Assembly (NCBI GenBank): GCA_965637545.1 | Contig: OZ281494.1 | Span: forward strand, 3,596,001 to 3,660,000 | From: Phallusia mammillata | Taxonomy: Eukaryota | Direction of reading: 5' to 3' | Length of the DNA stretch: 64,000 nucleotides | Shown: positions 644 to 56,471 of the stretch, one piece after another | Position numbering within the stretch: position 1 is the stretch's first letter | Layout of the letters: every line of letters starts with the position of its first letter | Program-made: the position numbers and the translations under genes | Notes under the pieces: model-generated | What the model was told of the DNA's origin: nothing | What the model saw: the letters and a program-made list of their open reading frames with translations, nothing else | The model's database searches: none

Positions 644-1294
644 CTACTTCAGCAACTGGTTTAAAAGCCTATAAAACAGTGCGAGGGCTGTACATCTTCC
701 CAGCAAACGACAAGAGAAAATAGCACGTTCCATGAACACTTTCTGATATGCCTCGTTACTACGGTTTTGCCGGATGTAGTTGTTCATAGCAAAAGCTGTA
801 GCTGGTGCACCACCAATCAGTGTGAAAAGGTGAAGATGATCTTGTGTCCAACATTTCCAGCCAAAATTTTGGTCCCACACATTTACACCGAGAGTAACGA
901 TCAAAATGATCACAAAATATCGAACAAAAATCACGCATGTAGCTTCACCAAAAACAGAAAACACACAAATACAAACAACAATTTCTATGATGAAGACAGC
1001 GAGTCCTGTCAGGTAACACTGTTTCAATTGGTTTCTCTGATCCTAAACAATAAAAACGAAATAAATGTCTATGCTAGAAATTTTGTATTACGTTGTCAAG
1101 CTTCTTTAAAATTAACTTTCAGAGCTTTTAATCAATAGCAAGTATGACTAGTATGATTCATTCAAGAAGAAATATTTTAAAAAATAGACAATCAAAGTAC
1201 CAACTTTTCATCATAGGTGTCATTTATGTTAGGCCTAAATACCTATTTTTTATTTTTTGCCAAACCTAAATTAAGAATTTTGAATAGCTACCAT
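644..1294 (-). CDS. DUF1294/YsdA-like membrane protein, subfamily C (about 133 aa; exons 1294-1292 [ATG] and 1042-644)
   Basis: ORF 644-1027 contains YFVIILIVTLGVNVWDQ...LHLFTLIGGAPATAFAM. It stays open back to the acceptor ttgtttag|GAT at 1043/1042. The upstream tatcaaaaATG|gtagct is homologous to the ATG|gt sites at 6372 and 36188. Confidence 0.75.
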
Positions 1295-1550
1295 TTTTGA
1301 TATGATAGTTGTCTGTGTTTGTTCAATGAACAAAGTTGGTTGTAATCTGGTCAATTTTTAATCCTTTCGGTGTAAAATTTGTGGTGAAAACAACCTGGAG
1401 AAGGATATACCAATTAACAACTTTCCTACCTATTCATTAAATTTCACGGTATAGTTAACATTAGTGCACTTGCGATTTAAAAATGCTAAACATGAAAAAA
1501 TTACCAGTTTGTTTTGCGTTAAAATCAATTAAACTTTTTGGACAACAAGC

Positions 1551-1868
1551 CAGAGTTGTAAACGGGCCTGAAATTGGAGCCCGAACCCGGCCCAAACCCA
1601 AACGAAACAAGCCTGAAACCCGGCCCGAATCTGAATCGTTTTTGAGAGGCCCGTTAAGGCCCAAAAGTTTGATTGGCAGGCGTATAAGCCTCAGGAAAGA
1701 CCGAGACAACCAACACAATAGAATAGACAAAAGGTCTTGAACAAGGCGCTGTTTGACATTACGTCCGGTCCAGAAACTGGCTACTTAGCTAGTTAATTTT
1801 GTTCAAAAAAATACTGACACTGAGTGTAAAGTCAGGTCCAAATCAGGGCCGTTTTTTTTTCAACTCTG
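1551..1868. mobile_element. hAT-type MITE (TIR CAGAGTTG...CAACTCTG) with perfect 8-bp TSD caacaagc
   Basis: TSD at 1543-1550 and 1869-1876. Same family as 22062-22373 and a fragment near 36800-37020. Confidence 0.85.
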
Positions 1869-1879
1869 CAACAAGCCTC

Positions 1880-3004: not shown

Positions 3005-3643
3005 TTATTTATCAATGGTTTTCACAACAATCAAAATAACACAGACAATAACCAAAACACCAACAAGCAACACAGAAGCGCAAATGAAACCTTGTTTGTA
3101 AGTATATTTGCTGCGTTTATGTCTTATGGAACAGTCACTCATTACAAATACTTTTGCAGGCGCTCCACCAATCTGTGTAAAAATATGCAACACTATTTCG
3201 GGAACTCGCCAATAACAGCAGTCACAACATTCTTCTTTGGCAATACGTTTGTCAGTAATAAGAGTTGACAATAACAGTTGATAATAAAATGACAGTAAAA
3301 TATGCAGCCAAACCATGACCGAAAAGCACACAAATAAAGCAAAAATACATGCGGCAACTTCTAATGCAATGTCAATCCACCCAAACAGTACCACCAGCAA
3401 AGCAAATCTTTCTTGTCGCGATTTTCTAACAGTTGGTAGTGATGGTTTGCCTAAATTCGCCTAAAACCTAATTTTTTTAAGGCCCTAAAAGACATGTGTA
3501 TCAAACAATACCATACGTGAATAATGTGCGTAAGTGATAGATGAAAAGCGTTTCATTTGTAGATCAAAATACACTGATGATCTAAAGTTTACTAATTAGT
3601 AACAGAGGATTATAGGCTACGTTTAATCTATACCACTTACAAT
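3005..3643 (-). pseudogene. DUF1294-like pseudogene, subfamily D (start codon ATG->ATT; internal compensating indels)
   Basis: The first exon acacacaaaacatctaaaATT|gtaagtggtatagattaaacgtag matches acacacaaaacatttatcATG|gtaagtggcatagattaaacgtag of the 45980 gene. The body contains TDKRIAKEECCDCCYWRVPEIVLHIFTQIGGAPA..RHKRSK, with frameshifts relative to the 46107 exon. Confidence 0.8.
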
Positions 3644-3886
3644 TTTAGATGTTTTGTGTGTTCTGAGGATGCAAAGAAATCAAAATAGAATTGAGATTTT
3701 TGTTCCAGGAACCCAAACATTTTTATGCTCTTAAAACAAAAAAACTTTACCTGTGATTTTACAAACTTATAAACAATTTCTTTTCCATGCAACAGTCTAA
3801 TTGTATTTATTGTTTAGGGTTGGAGTAATTCCAACCAATATCAGTCACGTTTTGAGATGTAAGCTGCTCACAGGAAACATTTAGAC

Positions 3887-4857
3887 CAGTGGTTCCCAAA
3901 CTTTATCTACTCGCGTACCATTATTTGGGTTCATGCAGCGTTCTCGTACCACCTACAGTCCTACAATAATTGTTAGAAAACTCTTCACAAATTCACAAAT
4001 AAAAAATGATGGGCAAAATGTTTAATGAATAAAAATGTTACTAAACTTTACTAACTAACTTTATCTTTAGTAACCAAAAGCAAAATTTAGTCAAACTTTT
4101 ACCGCCCTCGCTACAGTGCTACTGTCAACACAACTAGTAGCTGATTACCAAATCTGACTTTAAGGATTTATTACGTCATAATAACAGATTCATAACGTCA
4201 TAATACACCTGTTTCGTCACAAAGAAACCCTGCTTTACAGTTCGATGCGTCAATACATCAAGGAATTAGAATTTAGTAGGGAATGTAGTATGAAATTTCA
4301 CGCTCTACGTAACTTGTGTGAATTAAAATAATGCTTACGATAATCACTAGAACAGGGGTCTCAAACTCAAACTGCTTTGGGGGCCAAAAATAAACTTCTA
4401 AGTAAGTCAAGGGCCGCACTATATCGATATCAAACAAAATATTGCAAGATTAAAAAATGAAATGTTCATTTGTGCCATTAGCTACATTAAAAACAATATT
4501 GTATTAAATAACAAACAGATATATGTATGAAATATGACGCAACAATCTCAATTGCTGATTCTAAAACTGAGCGAGTTTGATTATCTTGTGAAAACGTGAC
4601 ATATACCACTAATAGAAAAATGATTGTATTATGTAAACTTTCTAGTCAAAAACGGTATTCCGCCAGAGTAAAACACAACTTTTAAAAAGTTACTTCGGGG
4701 GCCGCACAAAAACCCTTGGCGGGCCGCGTGTTTGAGACCCCTGCACTAGAAGATCATTTGCGATCGTTTGGTGTGAACTGAATAAGTTGCTCGCGTACCA
4801 CGTTGGAGACCTTCGCGTACCACTAGTGGTACGCGTACCATAGTTTGGGAACCACTG
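3887..4857. mobile_element. Non-autonomous hAT element (TIR CAGTGGTTCCCAAACT), 8-bp TSD atttagac, inserted in a DUF1294 exon
   Basis: TIRs at both ends; TSD at 3879-3886 and 4858-4865. Removing the element restores AAA CAT TTA GAC GAA TGC TAT (KHLDECY). Confidence 0.9.
4353..4743. mobile_element. hAT MITE nested in the 3887-4857 element (TIR CAGGGGTCTCAAAC), 8-bp TSD cactagaa
   Basis: TIRs caggggtctcaaac / gtttgagacccctg; perfect TSD at 4345-4352 and 4744-4751. Confidence 0.9.
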
Positions 4858-6371
4858 ATTTAGACGAATGCTATGGTGCTGGAATTAAAGTGTTATATTT
4901 GGAGTGTGTCTTATGTGTGATTATGTATTGTGCTGTTGGTAAGTTTGCATGCATCTTATCCGCCGCGTATTTTGTTGGTGTTGGCTTCGTTACTATGATT
5001 TTAAATGTATATGACAAATGCCTTTCACGCAGTGGCTCCCGCGGGCGCATTTCAAAAAATATATACTCCATCGTTTCACGTTCATTGGTGATGCTCCGGC
5101 CACTGCTTTTGCTATGAATGATCCAATTCGACACAAATGTAGTAAAGTCTCCTATCAAGAGAGGTTTGTTTACTGTGCATTTGTTTGTTGCATTTTGCTG
5201 ATGTTGTGTTCTGTTTTCACACTATTTTATAGACAAGAACTTAAAAGTCTGATGGAAAAGTAGAATAGCTAAAAGGGCTTATCATTTAAATGTGTATCTT
5301 CAAAACGTATCATGTATAAAGATATTTTTGTGCGGTATGTCCAATGCTCTTTATTGCTGTATTATACGCGCTGACAAATATGTTAAAAACAAAAATGTAA
5401 TATTCGACTTAGGAACAAAAGGGTTCGGGCTCAAGTTTTAATAAAACGGGTTTAAATCGAGTTGACTTTACACTCGGCCACAATTGTGTAGTAGTTTCAC
5501 TTCTGTAAATCTAATTTGCGACGGGATTTCTAGTTTTAAATGCCGGTTTGGATCGGATTTCGGGCTTGTACTTTCGGGTTCGAGCCCGCTTATAACTCTG
5601 TATTCACATGTGCCCTACACTTGCACGCACATAAACGGCGTTACACAATGATGACACCAGTAAGGGGGGTTTATGTAAAGCTGATCACTGATCAGGGTAT
5701 GAAAATTGGGAAAGCACCAAGCTCGCAACAACGGTTTCGCTCTGTGACGTTGCTGTTAACATAAAGAACCAAGGTAACTTCCAACACCGAAATATGTGGG
5801 CAATGCACAATGACTGCTTGTTGTTCACAAACCACATAACTTTTATTCATTGTATAGGTCACCGCAGATAAAAGCCATGACCAAATTAAAAGTGTTTACC
5901 TGATGTTGCAAACAATATTATACCCAATTTCATTTGTTCGTGTCAACAACCGTTACACGTGATTTGATTGGTTAAATGAACTTGAATAACAGCGCAGTTA
6001 TTAAGGTTTGGTGAACCGTTTGTTTAAAGGGTGGAGTATGAAGAGAAGCGTTTCGGTGCAGTTGATGAAAATCAGTTTGCAGCAGAGAAACTACAGAAAC
6101 ATTCAAGATAAATCGAGGTTAGTTTATAAAAAAGTTTATTAATTGTAATGCAAACAGGCTGGTAATTTCTATTTTTCGCGTTTTGAAATTGCTAGTACAT
6201 AAATGGTAATTAAACCGCAATGTTATGTGAGATTTAATGAAAAGGTGTAGGACAGTTGTTAATTGCTATTTCGATTTCTAGGTTTTTTTCAAGCATCAAT
6301 TAAACACCGAAAGTGTTATAAATTAACCAGAAGTTTGTTCATTGTACAAGCACTAACAGCTGTCACATCAA

Positions 6372-6530
6372 ATGGTAACTACTTTTGATTCGGGCTTGGA
6401 CTATAACGAGCAAAATAGATATTTAACCTTAATAGTCAAACTGTTACTAAAATCGATTGTATTTTGGATAGAATGAAACTTTTCGAAAATACTTCTAGTT
6501 TAAATAAATAGAATTAATAAAAGCTGAAAC
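6372..6530 (+). pseudogene. Orphan ATG-only first exon and intron start of a subfamily-C gene whose coding exon is missing
   Basis: cagctgtcacatcaaATG|gtaact and about 150 bp downstream match 36188 onward. The sequence then switches to the unrelated B-type upstream module, and no DUF1294 exon follows. Confidence 0.65.
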
Positions 6531-7438: not shown

Positions 7439-8400
7439 ATGGTATTTACACTTTTCATAACTTTCCAGTGATTGTAAAATGCAAAAGTTGATATATGTAG
7501 CTATTGGGACGAAAATCTGGAAATCATTGGACGTTTTAAAGCAAGTGTAATAGCAGAGGCTCGAAAACACCTGCGCACTGTAAGTTGCGCCTATAGAGCC
7601 AACTTAATCACTAATTTTGTTGATTTAAAACAATTTGCATCAGATTAAACTGCGGCCCAACCAAAACAAAAGTTATATCTCTATAAGGTCCAGACGACGT
7701 ACGAAGGTGAAATTACGATACAAATGTTGGCAGTTTATAGCTAGACCCGATTCAAGCCCGTTTTGAAAAGGGTGGAATGACATAAATTTTTAGCTTAACC
7801 CTAAAGTGGGTGTTGAATTTCTGCTTGGTTAAGAAGCAAAATCAAAAAATATAACCTGCTTTAAAGCTGATTACAGCGAAAAAAATTACTTGTGATTTAA
7901 GCCCACTTAAATTAATTTCTTTTTCGTGCAACAGTCTAATTGTGTTTATTGTTTAGGAGTGTGGTAATTCCAACCAACATTGTTCACGATTTGAGAAGCA
8001 AGCTGCCAACAGGCAACTTTTAGAGGAATGCTATGGTGCTGGAATTATAGTGTTTACTTTTGAGTGTGTCTTTTGTGTGATCATGTATTTTGCTGTTGGT
8101 ATGCTTGCATGCATATTATCCGCGACATATTTTGTTGGTATTTGCGCTTTTACCTTGTTTTTAAATGCATATGACAAAAAACATGCGCGCCGTCGCTCCA
8201 GCGAGCGCATTCCAGAACGTGTGCTGCATGTTTTTACACTGATTGGTGGTGCTCCGGCCACAGCTTTTGCCATGAATGATTGCTGCATTCATCACAAATG
8301 TAGTAAAGGGCTCTATAAAAAAGTTTTTTTAAACCGTGCAGGTTGGTGCTGCTTTTGGTTGGTGATTTCTGCAGTTCTTTTGCTGAGTCTAATATATTAA
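7439..8400 (+). CDS. DUF1294/YsdA-like membrane protein, subfamily A (about 148 aa; exons 7439-7441 and 7957-8400)
   Basis: gaccgagaATG|gtattt is conserved upstream of all A-type copies. The acceptor gtttag|GAG opens a frame continuous with ORF 8050-8400 (LNAYDKKHARRRSSERIPERVLHVFTLIGGAPATAFAMNDCCIHHKCSK). Confidence 0.75.
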
Positions 8401-9106: not shown

Positions 9107-9661
9107 ATGGTAAGTAGAATTCATCTTACAGTTTTACGACATGACAGTATATGTAGCGGTATAATTTAAAATCTAAAAAGTAAGGTGCCATTACAAGTCC
9201 ATCTCATAGTATTTATAAGCTGTGCCCTTCGAAGAAAAAAAACGTTTTATACAAACATATCTTGTAACTTTTTTTACAAAAGTATTTACCACATGATAAC
9301 GAAATTTGTATTTAACCTTTAGGATCAAGGCAATTCAAACTCACATCACTTATTTTACGAACCACAAACTACAACAACAAGTTACTTTGATACTTGCCAG
9401 GGCGCGGGAATTTTCATATTTGTTCTGGAAATTGTATTTTGTGTAATTATGCTTTGTGCTGTTGGTGCAAATGCATATGGCATATTCTTGATATATTTTG
9501 TTCTCATTTGGATCCGGACTCTTGCTGTAAATGCTCTTGACAAGGGCCTAGCATGCGATGGCTCTCCCCAGCGAATACCAGAAGATATGCTGCATTTTTT
9601 CACACTGATAGTTTCCTATCAAAATAGGAAAGTAAAGTTTCCTATCAAAATAAGTTTTTGA
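9107..9661 (+). pseudogene. DUF1294-like pseudogene, subfamily B (core GGAPA...RHKC motif deleted, frameshift)
   Basis: ATG|gtaagt at 9107 and acceptor at 9322/9323. Compared with the 14846 copy, 55 nt are replaced by a 21-nt insert (9610-9630) copied from the downstream flank. Confidence 0.85.
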
Positions 9662-9760
9662 GTTATGCAAGCTATTGCTGCATTTGGCTGATGATTTTTG
9701 CCGGTATTGCAGTTCTTAACGCAAAATGGTTTGCAGTGTCCCTTGTTCTATCAATGTAGC

Positions 9761-12915: not shown

Positions 12916-13948
12916 ATGGTATTTACACTTTTCATAACTTTCCAGTGATTGTAAAATGCAAAAGTTGATATATGTAGCTATTGGGGCGAAAATCTGGAAA
13001 TCATTGGACGTTTTAAAGCAAGTGTAATAGCAGAGGCTCGAAAACACCTGCGCACTGTAAGTTGCGCCTATAGAGCCAACTTAATCACTAATTTTGTTGA
13101 TTTAAAACAATTTGCATCAGATTAAACTGCGGCCCAACCAAAACAAAAGTTATATCCCTATAAGGTCCAGACGACGTACGAAGGTGAAATTACGATACAA
13201 ATGTTGGCAGTTTATAGCTAGACCTGATGCAAGGCAGTTTTGAAAAGGGTGGAATGACATAAATTTTTAGCTTAACCCTAAAGTGGGTGTTGAATTTCTG
13301 CTTGGTTAAGAAGCAAAATCAAAAAATATAACCCGTTTTAAAGCTGATTACAGCGAAAAAAATTACTTGTGATTTAAGCCCACTTAAATTAATTTCTTTT
13401 TCGTGCAACAGTCTATTTGTGTTTATTGTTTAGGAGTGGGGTAATTCCAACCAACATTGTTCACGATTTGTGAAGCAAGCTGCCATCAGGCAACTTTTAG
13501 GCGAATGCTATGGTGCTGGAATTATAGTGTTTACTTTTGAGTGTGTCTTTTGTGTGATTATGTATTTTGCTGTTGGTATGCTTGCATGCATATTATCCGC
13601 GACATATTTTGTTGGTATTTGCGCTTTTACCTTGTTTTTAAATGCCTATGACAAAAAACATGCGCCCCGTCGCTCCCACGAGCGCATTCCAGAACGTGTG
13701 CTGCATTTTTTTACACTGATTGGTGGTGCTCCGGCCACAGCTCTTGCCATGAATGATTGCTGCATTCATCACAAATGTAGTAAAGGGCTCTATAAAAAAT
13801 TTTTTTAAACCGTGCAGGTTGGTGCTGCTTTTGGTTGGTGATTTCTGCAGTTCTTGTGCTGAGTCTAATATATGAAGCTAAATTGTCTAAACTTTCACAC
13901 TATTGCTACTCACAACTAGTGATGTTTTTACAAAAGTACATCAAATAA
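12916..13948 (+). pseudogene. DUF1294-like gene, subfamily A, with a 1-nt deletion near 13800 (possible pseudogene or sequencing error)
   Basis: ATG|gtattt at 12916 and acceptor at 13433/13434. It reads aaaaaattttttt where the twin reads aaaaaagttttttt, giving TAA at 13806-13808. The restored frame runs to TAA at 13946-13948. Confidence 0.7.
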
Positions 13949-14629: not shown

Positions 14630-15349
14630 ATGGTATGTAGAATTTATTCTGTAGTTTTTAAAGATACGAGATTACCAAATGTGTAGCGGGAAAGTCGAAT
14701 AATTTAACATTAACTGAGCGGTTACAAATGCATCTCATAGTATCTAAAAGCTGTGCTTGAAAAAAAAAAAACGTTTATAACACACTGACCTACGAAGAGT
14801 TTCTGTTTCAACCACAGAATAACGAAATTTGTGTTTAACCTTTAGGATCAAGGCAATTCAAACTCACATCACTTATTTTATGAACCACAAACTGCAACAA
14901 CAAGTTACTTTGATACTTGCCAAGGCGCGGGAATTTTCATATTTGTTCTGGAAATTGTATTTTGTGTATTTATGCTTTGTGCTGTTGGTGCAAATGCTTA
15001 TGGCATATTCTTGATATATTTTGTTCTCATTTGGATTCTGACTCTTGCTGTAAATGCTTTTGACAAGGGCCTAGCATGCGATGGCTCTCCCCAGCGAATA
15101 CCAGAAGATATGCTGCATTTTTTCACACTGATTGGTGGTGCTCCGGCCACAGCTTTCGCAATGAATGATCCTATTCGACACAAATGCAGTAAAGTTTCCT
15201 ATCAAAAGAAGTTTTTGAGTCATGCAAGCTGTTGCTGCATTTGGCTGATGATTTTTGCCGGTATTGCACTTCTTAACGCAAAATGGTTTGCGGTGTCCCT
15301 TGTCCTATCAATGTACCATTCCATTCACTACTACAAAAATAACGAGTAG
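14630..15349 (+). CDS. DUF1294/YsdA-like membrane protein, subfamily B (about 168 aa; exons 14630-14632 and 14846-15349)
   Basis: aaaaATG|gtatgt; acceptor cctttag|GAT; open frame with AVNAFDKGLACDGSPQRIPEDMLHFFTLIGGAPATAFAMNDPIRHKCSK; AATAAA about 30 nt after the stop. Confidence 0.85.
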
Positions 15350-19238: not shown

Positions 19239-20403
19239 ATGGTATTTATACTTGTAACTTTTCAGTTGTTGTAAATTACAAAACGTTGTTATACTTAGCT
19301 ATTGAGGCAAATATCTGGAAAATACGGGGCGTTCTAAAACATAGAAAAAATTCTGCAACCTGCTGCCTTTCGGATAGAAATTAAGTACCCCTTAGAGAGA
19401 GGGTTTAAGCTATAGTTGTTATGCATTGCGAAAACGCCCACAGCTAAAATTCTAAAATCATTTTTCGGCAAAGTTTTAATATTACTATGATCACTGCAAT
19501 GATCTAAACCATGGTTTAAACGCCACAAAACAGTGATAAAAAAATCGGGGCTCACGATTTTATAAGCCTAATTGTATATGACTCTCGCGAAATAAAAGTT
19601 GCACACCCTGCTCTGAGGTGCAACTCAAACTTATTTTTTTAAGTTATACCTATAGTAGTTCCACAAGACTTACTAAGGTAAATTTACAATAGAAAGATGG
19701 CTAAGTGTAAAGTCAGACCCAATTCAAGCCCGTTTTGTCCAGACTTAAGCCCGAACTGGTATAACAAAACTTTAGGCTAGGTCTAAAGAGTGTGTAATGT
19801 TTCTTGTGGGTGGATAATTTAAGAAACAAAACCGAAATATACAGCTTGAGTTAAAGCGGTTTGAGCCATGTAGTTTGACGGTATCAACGTGTGGTGTAGC
19901 AAAACCCACCTAAAATCATTCACGTGCTTTTCAAAACTTTATAATTGTGTTTTTTTGTTTAGGAGTGGAACAGTCACAACCAATATCGTCCACATCATTA
20001 TGGAGTCAATCGTTTAGACGATTGCTATGTTGCTGGTGGTTTTGTGTTTATCCTTGAGTGTTTGGTTTGTTACCTGGCTGGTAAACCTGAAAGTGACATA
20101 TGTGCGATATACTTCTTTGGTATTTGCTGTTTTACTTTGCTTCTAAATATCTTGGATAAAACCCTTGCAATTGTTGACTGTTGTTTACGCATACCAGAAT
20201 GTGTGTTGCATTTTTTGACCATATTTGGTGGTGCTCCCGCCACAGCTTTTGCCATGAATGATTGCTGCCCTCGACACAAACGCAGTAAAGTGCCTTATCA
20301 AGAATGGTTTTTGATTTGTGCGACTGTCTGTATCTTTGGGCTTATGGTGTGTTGTGTTGGCCTATTTGTTGTAAAAAATATCAAACAACTGCCAAAATAT
20401 TAA
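19239..20403 (+). CDS. DUF1294/YsdA-like membrane protein, subfamily A-related (about 147 aa; exons 19239-19241 and 19963-20403)
   Basis: ATG|gtattt in module M; acceptor tgtttag|GAG; LNILDKTLAIVDCCLRIPECVLHFLTIFGGAPATAFAMNDCCPRHKRSK; AATAAA about 45 nt after the stop. Confidence 0.8.
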
Positions 20404-36187: not shown

Positions 36188-36792
36188 ATGGTAGGCTAAG
36201 TACCTTTGATTCTGACTTGAAATATAGCGAGCAAAATAGAGATTCAACCTTAGTAGTGAAACTGCTACAAAAATCGATTGTATTTGGAAAGAATGGAACT
36301 ATTTAAAAAAAGATTTCTTGTTTAAATAATTAGAATTATTAATTAAAAGCTGTTAATGTAAAGTTCTGAAAACTATTTTTTTGAAATAAGCTCAACAAAC
36401 TATTTTAAAATTTTGAAAGATCACGTTTGTTTTCGTTTCTTGTTGTTTAGGACGAGAAAAACGAATTGGAAAAATGCTATCTGGCTGGATGCAAAGTGTT
36501 TTCTATGGAACTTGTTTTTTGCATTTGTGTGTTTTATATTTTTGGTGAAGCTACATGCGGGATTTTTGTTCCATATTTCGTGATTATTTTGACCTCTACT
36601 CTCGGTGTAAATGTCTTGGACCAAATCTTCACACGTCGTGGATGGCAACATTTGTCAAAATATGGCCTGCATTTATTCACACTTATTGGTGGTGCCCCGG
36701 CCACAGCTCTGGCCATGAACAGCTATATCCGGCAAAACCAACGTAACGAGAGATATCAGAAAGTGTTCCTGGATTGTGCTTGTTTCTCGTAG
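36188..36792 (+). CDS. DUF1294-like protein, subfamily C, C-terminally truncated (about 114 aa; exons 36188-36190 and 36451-36792)
   Basis: catcaaATG|gtaggc; acceptor gtttag|GAC; LHLFTLIGGAPATALAM. The last TM helix present in the 644 paralog is replaced by a MITE fragment just after the stop. Confidence 0.6.
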
Positions 36793-37221: not shown

Positions 37222-37903
37222 ATGGTAAGTAGAATTTATTCTGTAATTTTGGTGTCGAAAATCTAAATAGTTCGGAGCAATTACAAGTGGATTTCATAGC
37301 ATGTAAACATTGTAAAGGCTGTGCTTGAACAAAAAAATGTTTAAAACACACTCACCTACGAAGTGTTTTTGTTTCAACCACAGGATAACGAAATTTGTCT
37401 TTTACCTTTAGGATCAAGGCAATGGAAATTCAAATCACTTGATTTACGAACCACAAACGGCAACAACAATTTACTTAAAAGCTTGTCAAGGGGCAGGATT
37501 TATCATTTTTGTCATGGAAATTGCAATTTGTGTATTTATGCTTTGTGGTGTTGATGAAAATGCGTTTGGCTTATTCTTATATTTTGTTCTCATTTGGACC
37601 CTGACTCTTGCTTTAAACGCTTTTGATCTAGCATGCAATGACTCCCCCATGCGTATACCAGAAAATGTGCTGCATTTTTTCACGCTGATTGGTGGTGCTC
37701 CGGCTACAGCTTTAGCCATGAGCGATCCTATTCGACACAAACGCAGTAAAGTTTCCTATCAAAAAAAGTTTCTGGAACATGCAGGCATTGGGTGCTTTTG
37801 TCTGTTGACTTCTACCGCCCTACACTTTCTTATTACAAACTGGTTTAAGTTGTTAATTGTCTTATCAATGTGCCTTTTCAAACGCTACTACACAAATAAC
37901 TAG
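37222..37903 (+). CDS. DUF1294/YsdA-like membrane protein, subfamily B (about 164 aa; exons 37222-37224 and 37412-37903)
   Basis: aaaATG|gtaagt; acceptor cctttag|GAT; LNAFDLACNDSPMRIPENVLHFFTLIGGAPATALAMSDPIRHKRSK; AATAAA about 60 nt after the stop. Confidence 0.85.
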
Positions 37904-40101: not shown

Positions 40102-40346
40102 ATGGCGAACTATCACTATGAACTGGTGGAAAACAAAAATCACGACAAGAAAGACTTACTTTGGTGTCGCTTCTGTTTGGGTGGATTGACATTTGTTTTA
40201 GAAGTTGCAGCATGTATTTTGCTTTATTTCTATACTTTGCACATTTCCAGTCTTGGTTTACCAAATATACCTACAAAGTAGATTTCATTTACGCTTCTGT
40301 GTTACTCGTGGTTGTTTTGGTTGTTGTGAAAACCACTGTCAAATAA
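40102..40346 (+). pseudogene. Internally deleted DUF1294-like pseudogene, subfamily D
   Basis: MANYHYELVENKNHDKKDLLWCRFCLGGLTFVLEVAAC is joined at about 40260 directly to the KYTYK C-terminal segment in another frame; the whole DK-RIPE-GGAPA core is deleted. Confidence 0.8.
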
Positions 40347-41653
40347 GCTCCTGACGTAGCAGTGGTTACTTTCGTGGATGCATTACTTGTAAATAATAAA
40401 TATACTTTGTTGCGCGGTGTTAATAGAAAATTATAAGAAACTTTCTTAAATCGATTTTGCATCTTAAATCGATTTTGCATCAACCCTAAAAGAGCAAGAG
40501 CATGTCTAAACATTATTTTTGTCAAATAAAATCGGCAGTTAAGGGTTAATTTAAAGCACAACTGAAACCAAATAACACAAAAAAACGGGAGTGGAGGAGT
40601 AAAGCGTATCGAAAACAACAAGTCAATTAAGCGATAAGCTGAGAGGGAAAATCCCGTCAACGAAACTATAGTTTCCCCATGTCACGCGACAAAACAAAAA
40701 AAATGCATTTTTTATCTCAAAACCAGTGTTACGTTAATCGTTGCTCGTGCTTTTTGAATCCACGTTAACACAATACTATTGCATGGACGGGTTCGAGCCC
40801 GTGTTGAGGTTGATACGGGTAAAGCTGCAGAGGGTATGAAACCGGAAAAGCCCCAAGCTCGCAAAAAGTTTCCGTTGCTGTTGAGAAGGCAACCAAGGCA
40901 ACTTCCCAAACCGAAATATGCGGGCAAGGTATAAACATGATTACATCGATGCTTAGGAACAAAATTTAGTTTTAAAGTAATTCAAAGCACTGTACAGTAC
41001 TTCTCGTTGCATACACCATATACCTATTCCTTTTTATTCATCGTCGACATAGGTCATGGCTTAGTTAAATGCGTTTACGTAGTGTTGCTACCAATATTAT
41101 ACCCAACTCTATTTGTTCGGGCTAACAACCGTTAAATGAGATTTGATTGGTCCAGTAAACTTGAATAACAGCGTAGCTATTGAAATTTGGCGCACCTGTT
41201 GTTTTAAGGGGAGGGGTATGACTACAGAACAGTTTCGGTTTAGTCGATGGAAAACAAGTGAAAAACAGTTTGTAGAAGAGGAGCCACGGAAAGGTTCAAG
41301 GTAAAACAAGTAACGAGGCTAGTCTTAAAAGTTGGATTGATTTTATTGTAAACAAGCAGGCAATTTTTATGTTTGTGATACAGGGTTAAATTCCTCTGTT
41401 TCAGTCTGACTCTTTCAATATTCACTCAATGTTAAACGGTCGGAAAGTAAATTTTCAGTTTCCGATTATATACCTGTTGGACTCGTTTGCCAGTAAATTT
41501 GAAATCCAAGCGTGTCGGCGGGCCGCACAACCTTTATTCAAGGTCTGCAGGTTGCACACCCCTGCCTTATAGTAAGTTGTAAAAAAATTCTTGAGGCAAA
41601 ACCTAAACATATTCCCTTTTTTATTGTTTTAGGATCGTGACATTTCAAACGAG

Positions 41654-42115
41654 ATGCGTCCACAAGCTACCAACGCAAGCTATGCAAACGCTTGCAATAG
41701 AGCTGCATGCAAAGTATTTTTTGCTGAGTTTCTCTTTTTATTGTTTAAGTGTTGTGCAGTTGGTTTTGCTGAAGGTGCCGAATTCCTTGTTTTTTTCGTT
41801 CGTCTTTGGTTCTTTACTTTGATTTTAAATATCTTGGATCAAATTCTCGCATGTACTGGCTTTTGCCGTCGTATACCCGAAGGTGTGTTGCACTTTTTCA
41901 CAGTGGTAGGTGGTGCCCCGGCCACAGCGATAGCTATGAATGATTTCTTCACCAGACATAACCGCAATAGTGTGGCTTATCAGAAAGTTTTTATTGACCG
42001 TGCAAACAAATGTTGCTCGTATCTGGTGTTTAAGGCAGTTATTTTATATTTCTTCAAAAAACACATTGAAAACTGTTTCCTAAAAGCCATTGAATTGATT
42101 TTCAATAACCACTAA
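41654..42115 (+). CDS. DUF1294/YsdA-like membrane protein (153 aa from the internal ATG; acceptor at 41632/41633, first exon not found)
   Basis: LNILDQILACTGFCRRIPEGVLHFFTVVGGAPATAIAMNDFFTRHNRNS. The frame is open from ttttag|GAT. No ATG|GT was found in the upstream module, which ends in a MITE terminus. Confidence 0.7.
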   Translation: MRPQATNASYANACNRAACKVFFAEFLFLLFKCCAVGFAEGAEFLVFFVRLWFFTLILNILDQILACTGFCRRIPEGVLHFFTVVGGAPATAIAMNDFFTRHNRNSVAYQKVFIDRANKCCSYLVFKAVILYFFKKHIENCFLKAIELIFNNH

Positions 42116-45979: not shown

Positions 45980-46559
45980 ATGGTAAGTGGCATAGATTAA
46001 ACGTAGCCCATAATCCTCCTTTACTAATTAGTAAACTTTAGATCATCAGTAAATTTTGAATGAATTTCCATCAAATACATATAATTTATAGTCACCTATA
46101 TTTTAGGCGAACCATCACCACCAGCAACTGTTGGAAAACAAAAATCACGACAAAGAAGATTTGCTTTGCTGGTGTTACTTTTTGGGTGCAGTAACATTTG
46201 TGTTGGTGGTTGTTACTTGTTGTTTGCTGTATTTCTGTAATTTGCAAATTTCCAGTTTAAGTTTGGCTGCTTATTTTGTAATTATTATATTATTGACTCT
46301 AATTGTCAACGTTACTGACAAGGGCATTGCTAAAGAAGAATGTTGTGACTGCTGTTGGCGAGTGCCAGAAAAAGTGCTGCACTTTTTCACACTGATTGGT
46401 GGAGCGCCTGCAACAGCACTTGCAATGAGTGATTGTTGTATTAGACATAAACGCAGCAAATATACCTACAAAAAGAATTTTATTTCTGTTGCTGCATTGC
46501 TTGATACCCTTTTGCTTGCTATTTGTATTTACTTGGCGCACACTATTGCTGTAAAATAA
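45980..46559 (+). CDS. DUF1294/YsdA-like membrane protein, subfamily D (about 151 aa; exons 45980-45982 and 46107-46559)
   Basis: ttatcATG|gtaagt; acceptor ttttag|GCG; VNVTDKGIAKEECCDCCWRVPEKVLHFFTLIGGAPATALAMSDCCIRHKRSK; AATAAA about 45 nt after the stop. Confidence 0.85.
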
Positions 46560-49462: not shown

Positions 49463-49717
49463 ATGACTTCGGACACAGACAACCATGATCCCACAATATT
49501 TTTTGCAATGGTTGGTGGACTTTGGATCATTATTAATGTACTTTCTTTCGTGTCGACGCTTATCTGCGGATGTGCAGAGAAGAGGCACATGTGTTCCGGA
49601 AGAGATTTGTATCACCTGTTAGTTTTTGTCGGTGGATCGCCAGGAATCGAAATGGCAAAATGGCTGAGGAGTAGTCTGTGCCACAAGCCCACCGAAAATA
49701 AAAATGGTGTGGTGTAG
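49463..49717 (+). CDS. Highly divergent DUF1294-like small membrane protein, subfamily F (84 aa)
   Basis: ttttacag|acATG with an upstream donor aaag|gtaagt at 49248 (5'-UTR intron). IINVLSFVSTL...YHLLVFVGGSPGIEMAKWL aligns to the IN-x2-(T/S)F...LL-x3-GGSPG DUF1294 pattern. Conserved paralog at 56219. Confidence 0.6.
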   Translation: MTSDTDNHDPTIFFAMVGGLWIIINVLSFVSTLICGCAEKRHMCSGRDLYHLLVFVGGSPGIEMAKWLRSSLCHKPTENKNGVV

Positions 49718-52189: not shown

Positions 52190-52641
52190 GAAATGAAAAC
52201 GACGCAAAAGCAAAGCCTATTTCAATCGTCTGGGTGGGAAAGAAGATCTGCATGAATGTTTCAAATACGGAAAAATTACACTTGGTCCTGAAATAATTAT
52301 TTGCATTTTGAACTATTCTATCGACTTCCAAATACACGTGCTTCAGTATTTTGTTGTAGTTTATTTTTACGTTTTTCTTAAATGTCGTTGACAAGTGTAT
52401 TGCTTGCAACTGTTGTTGTCATTGCTGTTGGCGAGTGCCAGAAAAGGTATTGCACTTTTTCACACTGATTGGTGGGGTACCTGCAACTGCTCTTGCAATG
52501 CAAGATCGCTGTTTACGCCATAAATGCAGTAAACTGGAATATCAGGTTGTTTATGAAAAAGTTGCCAAAGCATGCGTTTTGTGCTGTTCAATTAAGCTTA
52601 TACTGTTTATCTGCATTTTTTGTGCAAAAACATTTGAATAA
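52190..52641 (+). pseudogene. Frameshifted DUF1294-like pseudogene related to subfamily D
   Basis: KEDLHECFKYGKITLGPEIIICIL...QYFVVV is in one frame, and LNVVDKCIACNCCCHCCWRVPEKVLHFFTLIGGVPATALAMQDRCLRHKCSK in another. Frameshift near 52360-52368; the 5' end is also disrupted. Confidence 0.75.
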
Positions 52642-52692
52642 CAGAAATAAAATTATTTCCATAAAACTGATTTGGTAAAAAAAAGATAGTTT

Positions 52693-53951
52693 TGTAGCGA
52701 CTTCACTACCGTGTTTGCTTATGCGCATCGAAGCGTGTTATTTGCTTTTTTCTTTTAATCGCCATTGCCTCTTTATAAACGCCGATTTCGCGTTGCTCTA
52801 CCTCTTGACACGTTTCGAATTGACTCGGACCTGGCGCCGCTGCTCAATAAAGCTTCGACCGCCTCAATGGTGACCCCGCAACTCTCAAACGGACTTTGAA
52901 GGTCATGTAACACGCTGTCTCAAAGTTTCCATGTGTTCGCCAACTCAGCCACGTAGTTTGCTTCAAGTACGAGTTTCGTTCCAAACTGTGGCAGATAAAA
53001 CAGATTCTTCACGTCGACTCAACGTTGGAACTACATCTCGGCACACTGGAACAAGCTACAGCAATGTTACTTATTTTTTTGTTGGAACAACCTCTGCAAC
53101 AGATGCGTATCAAGTACAACGCCGACTTCAAGCATTTGCGATATCCAGGCAGAAACAAGCAGCGCGACTCCTGCACGTGCCTCTGGACATTTGATTTGAT
53201 TGAACGGCAGCCTGTAACAGTTAAGTACAAAGCACACGCACAACGCTTGCTTCAATCGATTACTCTACCCGGCACGACCGTGCAGCGCGACTCCTGCACT
53301 TGCCTCGGGGTATTCGATTTGCTTTGCCCGATGAGGATCCGACTGATCTTCATTATTTGGCTGAAAAGGCAACCGTGTTGTTGCTACTGAAAAAGCAACC
53401 GTGTTGTTGCTATTTCTTGTACCTCAAGCTTGCTCAGAGCACCGCCTTGCTCTACTGCGTTACGTCATCCCGCAGTGCCCCAGCAACACGTGCAGACCGC
53501 GCCTCCCGAACAAGCCTTCTGAACACACCTCTTCGGGCATTAAAAACCAACCCGGTTTTTGGATGAAATCCTCGCTCCGCCCCGAAACCGCCAGTCATCT
53601 GTCCTCCACGAACACTGTTCCCGCGGCACATGCCTGAGGATAATTGATTGGATTTTCGGCCAAGTAAGTACCGACTGTTCTTCGTAAATTGGCTCAGACA
53701 GCTGACATTTCTCTCCGTGCGACATTACGTTACCCACTGGCCATCGTAACACAAGCCCGCTTCTGGAGGGGGGGTCCTGTAGCGACTTCACTACCGTGTT
53801 TGCTTATGCGCATCGAAGCGTGTTATTTGCTTTTTTCTTTTAATCGCCATTGCCTCTTTATAAACGCCGATTTCGCGTTGCTCTACCTCTTGACACGTTT
53901 CGAATTGACTCGGACCTGGCGCCGCTGCTCAATAAAGCTTCGACCGCTTTA
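52693..53951 (+). mobile_element. Small non-autonomous Gypsy-type LTR retrotransposon (174-bp LTRs, tRNA-Trp PBS, 4-bp TSD gttt)
   Basis: LTRs at 52693-52866 and 53778-53951 are identical except for 2 of the last 4 nt. PBS TGGTGACCCCG at 52868; polypurine tract ggagggggggt before the 3' LTR; TSD at 52689-52692 and 53952-53955. The interior contains only degenerate gag-like remnants. Confidence 0.9.
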
Positions 53952-56218
53952 GTTTCAACTTTACCGAGAATATGTTGGTGGTAAAACCGAATTACGGCCA
54001 GGCTCGTCTCCTAAGGTTTTTGAATCCAGCGCTCAACTCAAATGTTCGTTTCAGCTACCAACCATCGTTAAAAGGAAGGTAGGAAAGTCAAGTTTGAAAT
54101 ACTGCTTTGTACCTTGTGACCTGGCCGTTGTCAAAAGTAGCATAAAAACTTTTATCTACTGAAGTACTATAACTTGCAGTCGTTAAATGTACATGTTATG
54201 TTGGAACAAAATGTCTTACCCTTTTGCCAGCACGTTTCGTTTTACGCATGATCACACACATGTTTTTTCTGTTATGCTCACATTAAAAACCATTAATTTG
54301 TTACATGGTAATCTGAGCTTCTGTTCACTTACTACTTTTTGCGGATGGTTAACCCGTACGTGGGTGGTTAAAATACTCATTACGACTGGGGTGTCATCAC
54401 GATTATCATTCAAACGTCAATAAGCTATTAAGGTGAACATATGCACGTACTTGGGTCAGGCATGAATCATCCATGCAGACCTGCGATCACGACATACTTA
54501 TAAAAGACCTGGGCCTTGCTGTATGAGAATGATTGGGAGACCGGCTTGATTTGACATGACGCTCTTAACAAGCCTGGCGTGCTATATAGTCACATGAAAC
54601 GTCAAATAATTACGATCTATTTTGATCACGTGTTTTTGTGAGGTTGTTTCAACTAGATTAACCAACATGTTTTGTTTTTTGTACAAAAAATTTACTGGAA
54701 GCATTTCCAGGCAGGTATTAAAAAGGAATTAGAAGACAATTTGAAAACAAGATTGGAAATGACTGGCTTAGACTGTCGCAACATTGATGAAGCCTATTAA
54801 AACGTCACATGATGAACTAATTGTAATCCTTCATCTATATACCTACGCACGCTAATGTGTAAGATCAGTGCACATCGCTTAACTGGACATAAACTTTAAA
54901 CGGTCGTTGAATTTGTAATGAATCTTGTAAAAACGACAATACAAAGAGCAAGTCAGTCAGACAGAGATGTGATGTTATTCAAAGGTTAATTCAATTCTTT
55001 TCATTCATGCGCTTACAACCATTAATCGGAGAATCTGTAGATTGAATAGCAGCGAATCTATTTTTAGTTCGACACACCTTCGGGAAACGAGGATTACAGC
55101 CAGTTGGTGTACACTGTACAGCAGGGGTCACCAAACTACGGCCCCACAAATCTCGCAACGCGATTTCATAGGGCACGCAGCAGGTATAATGTTGATATAC
55201 CCTGACTTTGCTTGATCTTTATGGGAATATAATATTAATGGTCTCAAGCAAACGTTTGTAGCGTAGAAAGAAATTAATAATAGCATCTTGTAGCGTGGGA
55301 TCCAAGCCTACTGTACCCCATCACAGTTTATTGAAACAATCAAACGGCGGAGTGACAAGTTCATATTCCTTATGCGGTCGTGAACGTGGTTGATTTATCT
55401 GGAACATAGCTTGCACTACAGATTTCACGATTATTAATTAGTTTCCAGATATGTGACCAACGTAAAGCGGTTGTGATTATAATCGTTAGGTATTGCAGCC
55501 TCTTTTGAGTTGTTTTGGATAGCTTCGGCTCGCTTTGTTTGCGTTGCGGTTATCGATTTTTGGTTTGCATTTGTTTGTAATATTGGTATTCCCAGAAACC
55601 TTGCTATTTGGTATTCCCAGAAACGTTTAAACACAATCAGCAAATCTGTGGTGTACAACATTCTTGGTAAACAATGTATCAACTAACAGCTTTACTTTAC
55701 TAGAACTTTAATTTAACAAAAGAGCAGATAGTTTGCCTGTTATGATGATAACAAACAATATCAAAAAAATACACTGTCGGATACATTATATTGACTCGTA
55801 GGACAATTAAGTGATGAAGCATTTGAAATGGATGAACCAAATTCTTTCATGGGCTGCTGAACTTAAATAAAAAAAAATATTTTCAGAGGCAAATATCGCT
55901 TCAGAAATAAAATATATTTTTTGATTGAAAGTCTGACTGCTGCACGATCGAAAGATAAATTGAACAAGGTTTCAACAAGGGAAAGTTTTATTTAAGGTAA
56001 GATAATGAAGAAAAAAAAGAGTATAACTAGTATTTGTCTGAATATTTGTCAAAATAAACACACCAAAGTCAGGCCAAATTAATAGCAGAATTTTACATTT
56101 TGTTTGCTTTGCACCTTGGCTAAAATTTAGGGCACATTTTTTTATTAAATTTTTATTTGTTGTTCGCGCACATTTGAACTCTGATTTCATAATCGCCTAT
56201 TTAATTATTTTTACAGAC

Positions 56219-56471
56219 ATGACTTCATGCAACAATGATCCCTTAATAGTCTTTGCAATAGTTGGTGGAGTTTGGACCATTATTAATACGCTTTCTTTCG
56301 TGTTGACACTTTTTTGCGGATGTGCAGCGAAGGAATGTGTGTGTTGCGGAAACGATGTGTATCAAATGTTTTTTTTTGGGGGGGGGGGGATCACCAGGAA
56401 TAACATTTGCAAAATTTCTGAGGGAATGTTGCGGTCCCATACCAATCGAAAGTAAAAATAATTTGGTGTAG
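56219..56471 (+). pseudogene. Subfamily-F divergent DUF1294-like gene with a +1 frameshift in a T9-G12 homopolymer (pseudogene or sequencing error)
   Basis: ttttacag|acATG TSCNNDPLIVFAIVGGVWTIINTLSFVLTLF. Removing one G restores GGSPGITFAKFLRECCG...NNLV*, colinear with the 49463 gene. Confidence 0.65.

What the first reader, a model, noticed from the sequence alone, without database searches (positions are those of the whole stretch)
644..56471. Expanded tandem array of at least 19 DUF1294/YsdA-family genes in an intron-containing animal-like genome
Seen: 19 loci share the signature Y-F...L-N-x2-D-K...R-I-P-E...L-H-x-F-T-L-I-G-G-A-P-A...R-H-K-x-S-K (two in a highly divergent form). They fall into at least six subfamilies, about 9 are intact, and most carry an N-terminal extension with an extra TM helix. 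Known: this motif corresponds to DUF1294 (Pfam PF06961; B. subtilis YsdA, COG3326), an uncharacterised family best known as single-copy, sometimes cold-shock-domain-fused, prokaryotic membrane proteins. Inference: a large, diversifying cluster in an animal genome suggests a domesticated (possibly horizontally acquired) membrane protein co-opted for a fast-evolving role such as defence or recognition. This is the strongest candidate for an undescribed system in the window.
Basis: partly seen in the sequence, partly recalled or inferred. Interest (0 to 1): 0.9.

Follow-up and report, generated by a model that had tools for sequence, protein, structure and literature searches.

The report
Tandem DUF1294 membrane-protein gene array
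A probable sea-squirt genome carries 19 neighbouring copies, about eight still intact, of a small four-helix membrane-protein gene of unknown function (DUF1294); this is a real lineage-specific gene-family expansion, but nothing yet shows an immune role or a recent bacterial import.

Summary
A family profile and tblastn find 19 DUF1294-type loci between 644 and 56455. Nine ORFs pass Pfam PF06961's own threshold. Eight loci look intact, two are doubtful and nine are broken or fragmentary.

Each gene has a main exon that begins right after a ...tttag acceptor. Most also have a conserved upstream exon that ends in ATG|GTA.

The conserved core is under purifying selection (dN/dS 0.2-0.5). The outer helices evolve close to neutrally.

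AlphaFold models are confident (pLDDT 92-93) four-helix bundles. They match only other DUF1294 models, including B. subtilis YsdA, and no solved structure.

In a careful tree the eukaryote-type proteins, which include the two Ciona species, separate from the bacterial ones (99/97). The window's copies form one clade with two genes from another sequencing run (100/94). This points to a lineage-specific birth-and-death expansion, not a recent transfer.

No RNA contigs cover four of the genes in the two RNA runs I laid. I found no evidence for a defence or recognition role.

The scan's other DUF1294 notes all lie on this same window; none is on other DNA.

Verdict: a real, ordinary-type gene-family expansion of an uncharacterised family. 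Moderate interest.

The parts
644..1294 (-). c01 (subfamily C). Exon 2 is 647-1042, the stop is 644-646 and the putative exon-1 ATG is 1292-1294. The ORF is intact, but the family motifs have degenerated: D-Q replaces D-K, and R-I-P-E and H-K are lost.
   Evidence: HMM E 7e-50. No Pfam hit at E<=0.01. Acceptor and ATG|GTA.
3008..3646 (-). c02 (subfamily D). Exon 2 is 3008-3460. The site homologous to c15's start codon reads ATT, and there is a 3-residue deletion in helix 2. Status doubtful.
   Evidence: Pfam 28.1 bits.
3821..5254 (+). c03 pseudogene. Its N-terminal piece (3821-3895) is separated from the rest (4815-5254) by about 0.9 kb of inserted DNA, and it also carries a frameshift.
7439..8400 (+). 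c04 (subfamily A), intact. ATG 7439-7441, exon 2 7957-8397. Full canonical motif set.
   Evidence: Pfam 47.3 bits..
9107..9756 (+). c05 (subfamily B) pseudogene. An internal deletion or frameshift falls after ...FFTLI.
   Evidence: Two HMM pieces in different frames..
12916..13873 (+). c06 (subfamily A), a near copy of c04. A 1-nt deletion in an A-run shifts the frame before helix 4.
   Evidence: dS to c04 is 0.03.
14630..15349 (+). c07 (subfamily B), intact. ATG 14630-14632, exon 2 14846-15346.
   Evidence: Pfam 39.2 bits..
19239..20403 (+). c08 (subfamily A), intact. ATG 19239-19241, exon 2 19963-20400.
   Evidence: Pfam 33.8 bits. Conserved exon 1.
27854..28901 (+). c09 (subfamily A) pseudogene. 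Exon 1 is conserved, exon 2 is shifted in frame near its start, and only the N-terminal half is recognisable.
31919..32841 (+). c10 (subfamily A). The ORF is open, but a 1-nt frameshift after ...SKVSYRE puts the ancestral helix 4 in another frame. There is no poly(A) signal within 400 nt. Status doubtful.
   Evidence: dN/dS about 1 against c04 and c06.
34507..35081 (+). c11 (subfamily E), intact. G-I-P-E replaces R-I-P-E.
   Evidence: Pfam 29.4 bits..
36188..36792 (+). c12 (subfamily C). The ORF is cut short before helix 4, exactly where a very high-copy ~55-nt repeat (36797-36860) begins.
37222..37903 (+). c13 (subfamily B), intact. The K of the D-K motif is deleted.
   Evidence: Pfam 32.4 bits..
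40105..40263 (+). N-terminal fragment resembling c15 (64% identity over 55 aa). It has no AG acceptor.
41633..42115 (+). c14 (subfamily F), intact. It has the acceptor and an in-exon ATG at 41654. D-Q and H-N variants of the motifs.
   Evidence: Pfam 24.2 bits, just under the threshold..
45980..46559 (+). c15 (subfamily D), intact. ATG 45980-45982, exon 2 46107-46556. Full canonical motif set, with a CCDCC loop.
   Evidence: Pfam 40.2 bits. AlphaFold model pLDDT 93.2 with four helices.
49463..49717 (+). c16, a highly divergent short relative (84 aa, two helices). D-K and R-I-P-E are lost.
   Evidence: hhalign probability 89%, E 2e-6, in register. HMM E 0.055.
52248..52635 (+). c17, a frameshifted pseudogene of subfamily D.
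56174..56455 (+). c18, a paralogue of c16 (60% identity over 52 aa), disrupted at a G-run.
   Evidence: No direct profile match.

Best explanation
The window holds a lineage-specific tandem array of eukaryote-type DUF1294 genes in a probable ascidian (tunicate) genome. The array evolves by birth and death.

Gene structure. Each gene has two exons. Exon 1 is a 5'UTR ending in the start codon (ATG|GTA...). A phase-0 intron of 127-817 nt follows. Exon 2 carries the rest of the roughly 150-aa protein.

How the array grew and decayed. It grew by repeated tandem and segmental duplication; synonymous divergence ranges from 0.03 to saturation. About half of the copies have been lost to frameshifts, DNA insertion, truncation or loss of the start codon.

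The protein. It is a cysteine-rich four-helix integral membrane protein. Its conserved core runs from helix 2 through the D-K...R-I/V-P-E loop and the L-H...G-G-A-P helix 3 to the R-H-K-x-S-K loop, and is homologous to bacterial YsdA/DUF1294.

Inference, not shown. The invariant polar residues at the helix ends form one functional site at a membrane face, used for transport, channel activity or membrane-embedded catalysis. The paralogues keep this core while varying the outer helices 1 and 4 and the Cys-rich juxtamembrane loops. Several intact copies have lost core residues, so they have probably diverged in function or lost it. The biochemical function is unknown for the whole family.
For: - 19 loci, with profile E-values down to 1e-58. 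PF06961 scores above its threshold for 9 ORFs.
- Every main exon starts directly after ...tttag, in frame.
- ATG|GTR lies 127-817 nt upstream in 13 copies and is conserved within subfamilies. The strict form (A at -3 plus GTA) occurs in 5 of 5 independent subfamilies, against 17% at random sites.
- A poly(A) signal lies within 126 nt of the stop in 8 of 10 copies.
- Core dN/dS is 0.22-0.5; the flanking helices give 0.4-1.6.
- The segmental duplications are mapped.
- AlphaFold models have pLDDT 91.7 and 93.2, each with four helices.
- Fold matches are to DUF1294 models only, including YsdA.
- An exhaustive profile search gives 2051 hits. The best are unnamed eukaryotic contigs, then Ciona, then bacterial DUF1294 proteins.
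- Careful tree: eukaryote-type against bacterial 99/97; window copies plus P0001/P0035 100/94; eight window copies monophyletic at 100/91.
- Cysteine content is 6.6% in the window copies, 4.3% in eukaryote-type proteins and 1.1% in bacterial ones.
Against: - No transcript evidence. Twelve RNA runs of the species hold about none of the sampled words of 32-42 kb. The contigs of two RNA runs do not cover c10-c13.
- The two-exon model is therefore predicted, not observed.
- dS is saturated for many pairs, so the deep dN/dS values are rough.
- The youngest pairs (c04/c06/c10) have dN/dS close to 1.
- Membrane orientation is unresolved. Positive-inside counts put the R-H-K loop in the cytosol. Bacterial fusions to a cold-shock domain imply that the D-K/R-I-P-E loop is cytosolic.
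- The organism is inferred only from Ciona being the best named relative and from other readers' notes.
Confidence: 0.8

Rival explanations
1. One reading: a horizontally acquired membrane protein that was domesticated and diversified for defence or self/non-self recognition.
For: - Birth-and-death dynamics, with about half the copies pseudogenes.
- Near-neutral or faster change in the N-terminal and C-terminal helices.
- A possible deletion allele that removes c10.
- A C-type-lectin-like receptor gene lies inside the array, though its Pfam hit is weak.
Against: - There is no ectodomain or signal peptide. The loops are 18 aa or shorter and the variable parts are transmembrane helices.
- The core is under purifying selection.
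- PADLOC gives no hit for the DUF1294 part.
- The proteins sit in a eukaryote-type clade together with Ciona, not inside the bacterial ones.
- No expression data of any kind.
Confidence: 0.08
2. The array is a transcriptionally silent, decaying relic, and none of the copies is functional today.
For: - No RNA contigs over c10-c13, and about zero word share in 12 RNA runs.
- 9 to 11 of the 19 loci are broken.
- Several of the intact ORFs lack family-invariant residues.
- dN/dS is about 1 in the youngest pairs.
Against: - Eight ORFs of 130-167 codons remain open, each with an acceptor, and all but c14 with an upstream ATG exon (c14 starts at an in-exon ATG). Seven of the eight have a poly(A) signal within 126 nt of the stop; c14 has none.
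- Core dN/dS is 0.22-0.5 over pairs with dS 0.3-1.4. That requires long-lasting constraint after the duplications.
- The RNA runs were small (16-34 Mb of contigs), and contigs show presence, not absence.
Confidence: 0.1
3. The genes are passengers of a transposable element, and the array reflects repeated TE insertion.
For: Dispersed repeats lie between the genes: 1870-2584 matches 6124-5418, and 5727-6520 matches 35559-36342. A high-copy repeat abuts c12.
Against: - Similarity between subfamilies is confined to the coding exon and, within subfamilies, to contiguous flanks that are typical of segmental duplication.
- No terminal repeats frame the genes.
- 17 of the 19 loci share one orientation in one place.
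Confidence: 0.02

Closest known systems
Bacillus subtilis YsdA (P94519) and bacterial DUF1294 / PF06961 / COG3326 proteins
   Same: - Homologous core, with the motifs N...D-K, R-I/V-P-E, L-H, G-G-x-P and R-H-K-x-x-K.
- Pfam hits.
- The window profile finds bacterial members at E about 1e-11.
- The predicted fold superposes: TM-score by hit 0.71 for YsdA, and 0.66/0.79 for a 122-aa bacterial cluster.
   Different: - YsdA has three helices; the window proteins have four.
- The window proteins have about six times the cysteine content, including CC/CCxCC next to the membrane.
- The genes have a spliceosomal intron.
- They sit on a separate eukaryote-type branch (99/97).
- They have no cold-shock-domain fusion.
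Ciona intestinalis LOC113474161 (XP_026689846.1) and Ciona savignyi H2ZMI3/H2ZMI4
   Same: These are the only named animal relatives found. They are eukaryote-type DUF1294 proteins with the same four-helix layout. The C. intestinalis model contains two tandem DUF1294 units, so local duplication occurs there too.
   Different: They lie outside the window's clade and share 25-30% identity with the window copies. No large array is documented for Ciona in the data I could reach.
DUF1294 counts in cnidarian genomes (Hydra viridissima 5, H. vulgaris 1, Clytia 1, Aurelia 1, Morbakka 2; PMC7642931) and the Dictyostelium DUF1294 gene listed as a candidate horizontal transfer (PMC3188802)
   Same: They show that DUF1294 is already known to occur, sometimes in several copies, in animals and other eukaryotes.
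   Different: These are domain counts only. No array, gene structure or selection analysis is given. The window's 19 loci in 56 kb is a far larger and denser set.
Bacterial cold-shock-domain-DUF1294 fusion proteins (for example P0049, P0051)
   Same: They have the same membrane core, preceded by an extra hydrophobic helix. The membrane part therefore also has four helices.
   Different: They carry an N-terminal nucleic-acid-binding cold-shock domain that the window genes lack.

Membership tests
DUF1294 (Pfam PF06961; YsdA; COG3326) | Match to the Pfam model at or above its gathering score (25 bits) | tested here: met
   Nine ORFs score 28-47 bits: c02, c04, c06, c07, c08, c10, c11, c13 and c15. 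c14 scores 24.2. c01, c16 and c18 have no hit.
DUF1294 (Pfam PF06961; YsdA; COG3326) | Conserved motif set: N..D-K, R-I/V-P-E, L-H, G-G-x-P, R-H-K-x-x-K | tested here: met
   The set is complete in c02, c04, c06, c07, c08 and c15. There are single changes in c10, c11 and c13, two changes in c14, and larger losses in c01, c12, c16 and c18.
DUF1294 (Pfam PF06961; YsdA; COG3326) | Predicted fold superposes on known family members | tested here: met
   All of the best AlphaFold DB cluster hits that carry a name are DUF1294 or cold-shock-DUF1294 proteins; the rest are unnamed (TM 0.55-0.77). The only Swiss-Prot match is YsdA. The top Atlas hit is a bacterial DUF1294 cluster.
DUF1294 (Pfam PF06961; YsdA; COG3326) | An experimentally defined biochemical activity shared with the family | not testable with these tools
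   No function is known for any member. The 7 papers that mention DUF1294 give none, and searches for PF06961 and COG3326 return no papers.
Diversified immune or recognition receptor array | A variable, exposed ligand-binding domain | tested here: not met
   The proteins are about 150 aa and consist of four helices with loops of 18 aa or less. The variable parts are helices 1 and 4.
Diversified immune or recognition receptor array | Positive selection and immune-linked expression | tested here: inconclusive
   Regional dN/dS exceeds 1 only in small counts for the terminal segments. No RNA coverage was found.
Recently horizontally acquired bacterial gene | Nested inside a bacterial clade and absent from related animals | tested here: not met
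   Eukaryote-type proteins are separated from the sampled bacterial ones at 99/97. Relatives occur in two Ciona species and on many large eukaryotic contigs. An ancient transfer into eukaryotes is not excluded.

The most novel reading that the evidence does not exclude
The eukaryote-type, cysteine-rich DUF1294 proteins are a so-far unrecognised class of small membrane proteins with a tunicate-specific physiological role. Candidate roles are metal or redox handling, or palmitoylation-dependent membrane organisation in blood cells. The 19-locus array would then be the genetic basis of a diversified repertoire: the paralogues that lost the D-K/R-I-P-E/H-K site (c01, c14) would act as regulators or decoys of the canonical ones.
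Probability: 0.1. Interest if true: 0.7.

Novelty: new member of a known kind. Interest (0 to 1): 0.4.

Why it matters
DUF1294 is a widespread membrane-protein family, mostly bacterial, for which no function is known in any organism. An animal lineage that has amplified it to 19 loci offers a natural mutational series. Canonical paralogues, paralogues with altered motifs and dead paralogues sit side by side, and the core is clearly under constraint.

This gives a handle for working out which residues matter. It also gives a eukaryotic system, ascidian embryos, in which localisation and loss of function can be tested.

The data also show that eukaryote-type DUF1294 proteins form their own clade, which is cysteine-rich and almost unannotated. 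Beyond that, this is an ordinary example of tandem gene-family expansion and decay.

Tried and rejected
- Word-indexed protein searches. The search with c13 gave nothing. Searches with two alignments gave only unnamed contigs plus Ciona. The animal range of the clade could therefore not be named.
- Fold searches. PDB by Foldseek had no match at E<=0.001 (best E 1.7). The wide VIA search peaked at Z 8.5, which is noise level for helical bundles. BFVD viral models gave nothing. The sub-threshold Foldseek PDB matches to copper-storage four-helix proteins (E 2.4-4.3, TM 0.26) were rejected as chance.
- PADLOC and NCBIfam gave no hit for the DUF1294 part; only the cold-shock domain of a bacterial fusion matched.
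- Rfam and tRNA scans of the window found nothing.
- Literature. DUF1294 appears in 7 papers, none functional. 'YsdA' in E. coli papers refers to the unrelated tisAB locus. A search for the run accession DRR090687 gave no paper.
- RNA evidence. No holder was found among the listed RNA runs, and two laid runs gave no coverage. This is absence of evidence only.
- Spliced-leader trans-splicing as the source of the start codon was considered and set aside. The coding frame is open and constrained from the first base of exon 2, and several copies have no in-exon ATG before helix 1. From my own knowledge, not tested here, the tunicate leader carries no AUG. A cis-spliced ATG exon is therefore needed.
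- A simple hydropathy scan merged neighbouring helices and was not used for topology.


Full report
**Observation**

The window has no N runs and about 36% G+C. The ORF list already shows many ORFs that share ...R-I-P-E..L-H-F-F-T-L-I-G-G-A-P-A-T-A...R-H-K-x-S-K.

Pfam-A assigns PF06961 (DUF1294) above its gathering score to nine ORFs: c02, c04, c06, c07, c08, c10, c11, c13 and c15, at 28-47 bits. c14 falls just below, at 24.2 bits. c05 and c12 give weak hits.

I built a profile from twelve window ORFs and ran it over all six-frame stop-to-stop fragments. It finds 15 strong loci. It also finds an N-terminal half copy at 28713-28880, a frameshifted copy at 52248-52611 and a weak hit at 49439-49651.

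tblastn adds a c15-like fragment at 40105-40263. It also shows that c03 is split: 3821-3895 and 4815-5254 are separated by about 0.9 kb.

The 49463-49717 ORF aligns to the family profile in the correct register (hhalign probability 89%, E 2e-6). The 56174-56455 ORF is 60% identical to it over 52 residues, although it does not match the profile by itself.

The total is 19 loci, two of them highly divergent.

**State of the copies**

Eight copies have clean full-length ORFs: c01, c04, c07, c08, c11, c13, c14 and c15. Two are doubtful:
- c02: the site homologous to c15's start codon reads ATT.
- c10: a 1-nt frameshift moves the ancestral helix 4 into another frame.

The other nine are broken:
- c03: inserted DNA plus a frameshift.
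- c05: internal deletion or frameshift.
- c06: 1-nt deletion in an A-run.
- c09: frame shifted near the start of the exon, and only the N-terminal half is left.
- c12: the ORF ends where a very high-copy ~55-nt repeat begins.
- The 40.1-kb fragment.
- c17: frameshift.
- c18: disrupted at a G-run.
- c16: a short two-helix ORF that lacks the core motifs.

Among the intact copies, only c04, c07, c08 and c15 keep every family-invariant residue. c11 has G-I-P-E. c13 has lost the K of D-K. c14 has D-Q and H-N. c01 has lost D-K, R-I-P-E and H-K.

**Gene structure**

In 13 copies the stop-to-stop frame that holds the domain begins at the base right after a pyrimidine-rich ...tttag. The TAG is itself the in-frame stop, so the junction is phase 0. 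Several copies (c04, c07, c13, c15, c08) have no ATG before the first helix, so the start codon must lie upstream.

An ATG|GTR site lies 127-817 nt upstream in 13 copies. Within each subfamily it sits in a conserved block; in subfamily A, for example, all five members share ...acaagcaa.atct.c...ATG|gtatt.

A random site in this window has such a hexamer in that range 39% of the time. The stricter form (A at -3, GTA donor) occurs at 17% of random sites. That stricter form is present in all five independent subfamilies that have an upstream ATG, roughly 1e-4 if the subfamilies are independent.

Two relatives from another sequencing run (L001, L005) have the same acceptor in the same place, followed by 8 nt and an in-exon ATG. 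The intron position is therefore conserved, while the start codon lies on the other side of it.

AATAAA or ATTAAA lies within 126 nt of the stop in 8 of 10 open copies; c10 and c14 lack it.

None of this structure is confirmed by RNA.

**Expression**

The two runs that hold the region (X1, X2) are DNA: their coverage is contiguous and even. Twelve RNA runs of the same species label hold next to none of the sampled words of 32-42 kb. Contigs of the two RNA runs I laid (X3, X8) cover nothing in 31910-37909 except the high-copy repeat at 36.8 kb.

The RNA runs are small, and contigs show presence rather than absence. Expression therefore remains open.

**Evolution inside the array**

Self-comparison shows a segmental duplication of 7096-12569. 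Its copies lie at 12573-15315, 17751-19177 and 22638-23973, at 90-93% identity. The 49.0-49.9 kb and 55.8-56.6 kb pair is 72% identical.

Synonymous divergence between paralogues runs from 0.03 (c04/c06) through 0.3-0.6 (c07/c13, c04/c10, c01/c12) to saturation.

I split the alignment into regions. The core, from helix 2 to the Y-Q-x-x-F after the R-H-K loop, has dN/dS 0.22-0.5 in nearly all pairs. The N-terminal segment with helix 1, and helix 4, give 0.4-1.6. The young c04/c06/c10 group is near 1 throughout.

This is the pattern of birth-and-death evolution with a constrained core. It does not show diversifying selection on a recognition surface.

**Relatives and phylogeny**

An exhaustive profile search of 1.84 billion representatives gave 2051 hits at E<=1e-3 and 50 at E<=1e-10. 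The best hits are:
- P0001 and P0035, both from run DRR090687.
- Ciona intestinalis XP_026689846.1, a model with two tandem DUF1294 units.
- Ciona savignyi H2ZMI3/H2ZMI4.
- Several dozen unnamed proteins on contigs of up to 2.2 Mb.
- Ordinary bacterial DUF1294 proteins, many fused to a cold-shock domain.

In a careful maximum-likelihood tree (89 rows, 139 columns) the eukaryote-type sequences separate from the sampled bacterial ones at 99/97. The ten window copies plus P0001 and P0035 form a clade at 100/94. Eight window copies are monophyletic at 100/91. c02 and c15 pair at 100/90.

Most of the array therefore arose within the window's own lineage. Only the split of the c02/c15 subfamily may be older.

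Other eukaryotic contigs carry one or two copies per 20 kb. Three lie on one 933-kb contig and two lie within 45 kb on a 1.59-Mb contig, again with pseudogenes. Small multi-copy loci are thus not unique to this genome, though none seen here approaches 19 loci in 56 kb.

In the literature, DUF1294 has been counted in medusozoan cnidarians, with Hydra viridissima at 5 (PMC7642931). It is listed as a candidate horizontal transfer in Dictyostelium (PMC3188802).

Some AlphaFold DB cluster hits carry the hyphenated name 'DUF1294-domain-containing protein'. From memory, that style and those accessions belong to fungi; this was not checked.

The family's eukaryotic distribution is patchy. An ancient transfer cannot be excluded, but the window's lineage did not acquire the gene recently.

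That the genome is a tunicate's rests on two things: Ciona is the only named close relative, and other first-stage notes call it a 'probable tunicate'. I did not test those notes independently.

**Protein**

AlphaFold2 with the family alignments gives confident models. P0001 has pLDDT 91.7 and window c15 has 93.2, both with pTM 0.84. Each has four helices; in c15 these are residues 2-43, 47-76, 88-106 and 119-149.

Foldseek finds no solved structure. The wide VIA search stays at noise level for helical bundles, and no viral model matches. The only real matches are other DUF1294 models:
- B. subtilis YsdA, which aligns to helices 2-4 only.
- Bacterial and other clusters in AlphaFold DB.
- A 122-aa bacterial cluster in the ESM Atlas that aligns over all four helices (TM 0.66/0.79).

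The extra N-terminal helix is therefore real relative to YsdA and to the 55-residue Pfam model. It is not an animal invention.

A derived feature of the animal branch is cysteine enrichment: 6.6% in the window copies, 4.3% in eukaryote-type proteins and 1.1% in bacterial ones. CC or CCxCC motifs sit next to helices 2 and 3, and many cysteines lie in helices 1 and 4.

Charge counts make the R-H-K loop the only strongly positive segment (net +2.6 to +3.4). This predicts that it is cytosolic. Bacterial fusions, in which a cytosolic cold-shock domain precedes two hydrophobic helices, predict instead that the D-K/R-I-P-E loop is cytosolic.

Both predictions would hold if the G-G-x-P helix 3 were re-entrant, which would put all the invariant polar residues on one face. 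That is a hypothesis. I could not inspect the model coordinates.

**How it most likely works**

Shown:
- Membership of the family.
- The anatomy of the array.
- The constrained core.
- The four-helix model.
- The lineage-specific expansion.

Inferred:
- The proteins are small integral membrane proteins. Their invariant polar residues (N, D-K, R-x-P-E, H, G-G-x-P, R-H-K) form a single functional site at the membrane surface.
- Conservation of this kind from bacteria to animals fits a binding, transport or catalytic site better than a purely structural role.
- The paralogues differ mainly in the lipid-facing or partner-facing outer helices and in the Cys-rich juxtamembrane segments, which may be palmitoylated or bind metal. 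Several have lost core residues and have probably changed or lost activity.

I put about 0.8 on the descriptive account: a lineage-specific birth-and-death array of eukaryote-type DUF1294 genes with a constrained core. I put much less, about 0.3-0.4, on any particular biochemical role.

I found nothing that links the array to immunity. The only hint is its neighbour, a lectin-like receptor gene whose C-type lectin exon gives just a weak Pfam hit (E 0.0035).

**Verdict**

- The family assignment and the description of the array are right.
- The ideas of horizontal transfer and of a defence or recognition role are not supported.
- The finding is a new and unusually large set of members of a known but uncharacterised family.
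- The scan's other DUF1294 notes all concern this same window; none concerns other DNA.

Noticed in passing
window 7096-12569 against 12573-15315, 17751-19177 and 22638-23973: A segmental duplication (90-93% identity) copies two DUF1294 genes. It also copies the 180-aa tyrosine-rich tail ORF of the lectin-receptor gene (11298-11834 against 22701-23243). The second copy is interrupted by about 2.4 kb and about 3.5 kb of other DNA, and the latter stretch holds c08.
   Followed up: partly
window 36797-36860: A very high-copy ~55-nt repeat. Its word depth is about 278,000 against a baseline of about 460 in DNA run X1, and it also appears in RNA-run contigs. It sits exactly where the c12 ORF is cut short. 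Its loose ends in the reads point to a dispersed element.
   Followed up: partly
window 32065-32778: A DNA contig present in both DNA runs joins 32065 to 32778. It skips 712 nt, including almost all of c10's exon 2. This is either a deletion allele or a similar remnant elsewhere in the genome.
   Followed up: no
window 34955-35016: In the C-terminal coding part of c11, the DNA-run contigs differ from the window. One form has an 8-nt deletion at 34981, which would shift the frame. The other has six substitutions. These may be allelic variants or an assembly difference.
   Followed up: no
window 22701-25314 (- strand): A multi-exon gene with a C-type-lectin-like exon (24200-24451, Pfam E 0.0035, below threshold) and a Tyr-rich tail ORF lies inside the array.
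   Followed up: partly
window 1870-2584 against 6124-5418; 5727-6520 against 35559-36342; 38906-39744 against 54104-54926: Dispersed repeats of 73-84% identity lie between the genes. They are probably transposable elements.
   Followed up: no
window 52900-53950: A locally G+C-rich stretch (0.44 against about 0.36) with overlapping ORFs on both strands and no Pfam hit for the ORF I tested. It may be part of a mobile element.
   Followed up: no
L001 330-350 and L005 3040-3065: Two relatives from run DRR090687 have the same ...tgtttag acceptor, followed by 8 nt and an in-exon ATG. The intron position is conserved between species, but the start codon lies on the opposite side of it.
   Followed up: partly
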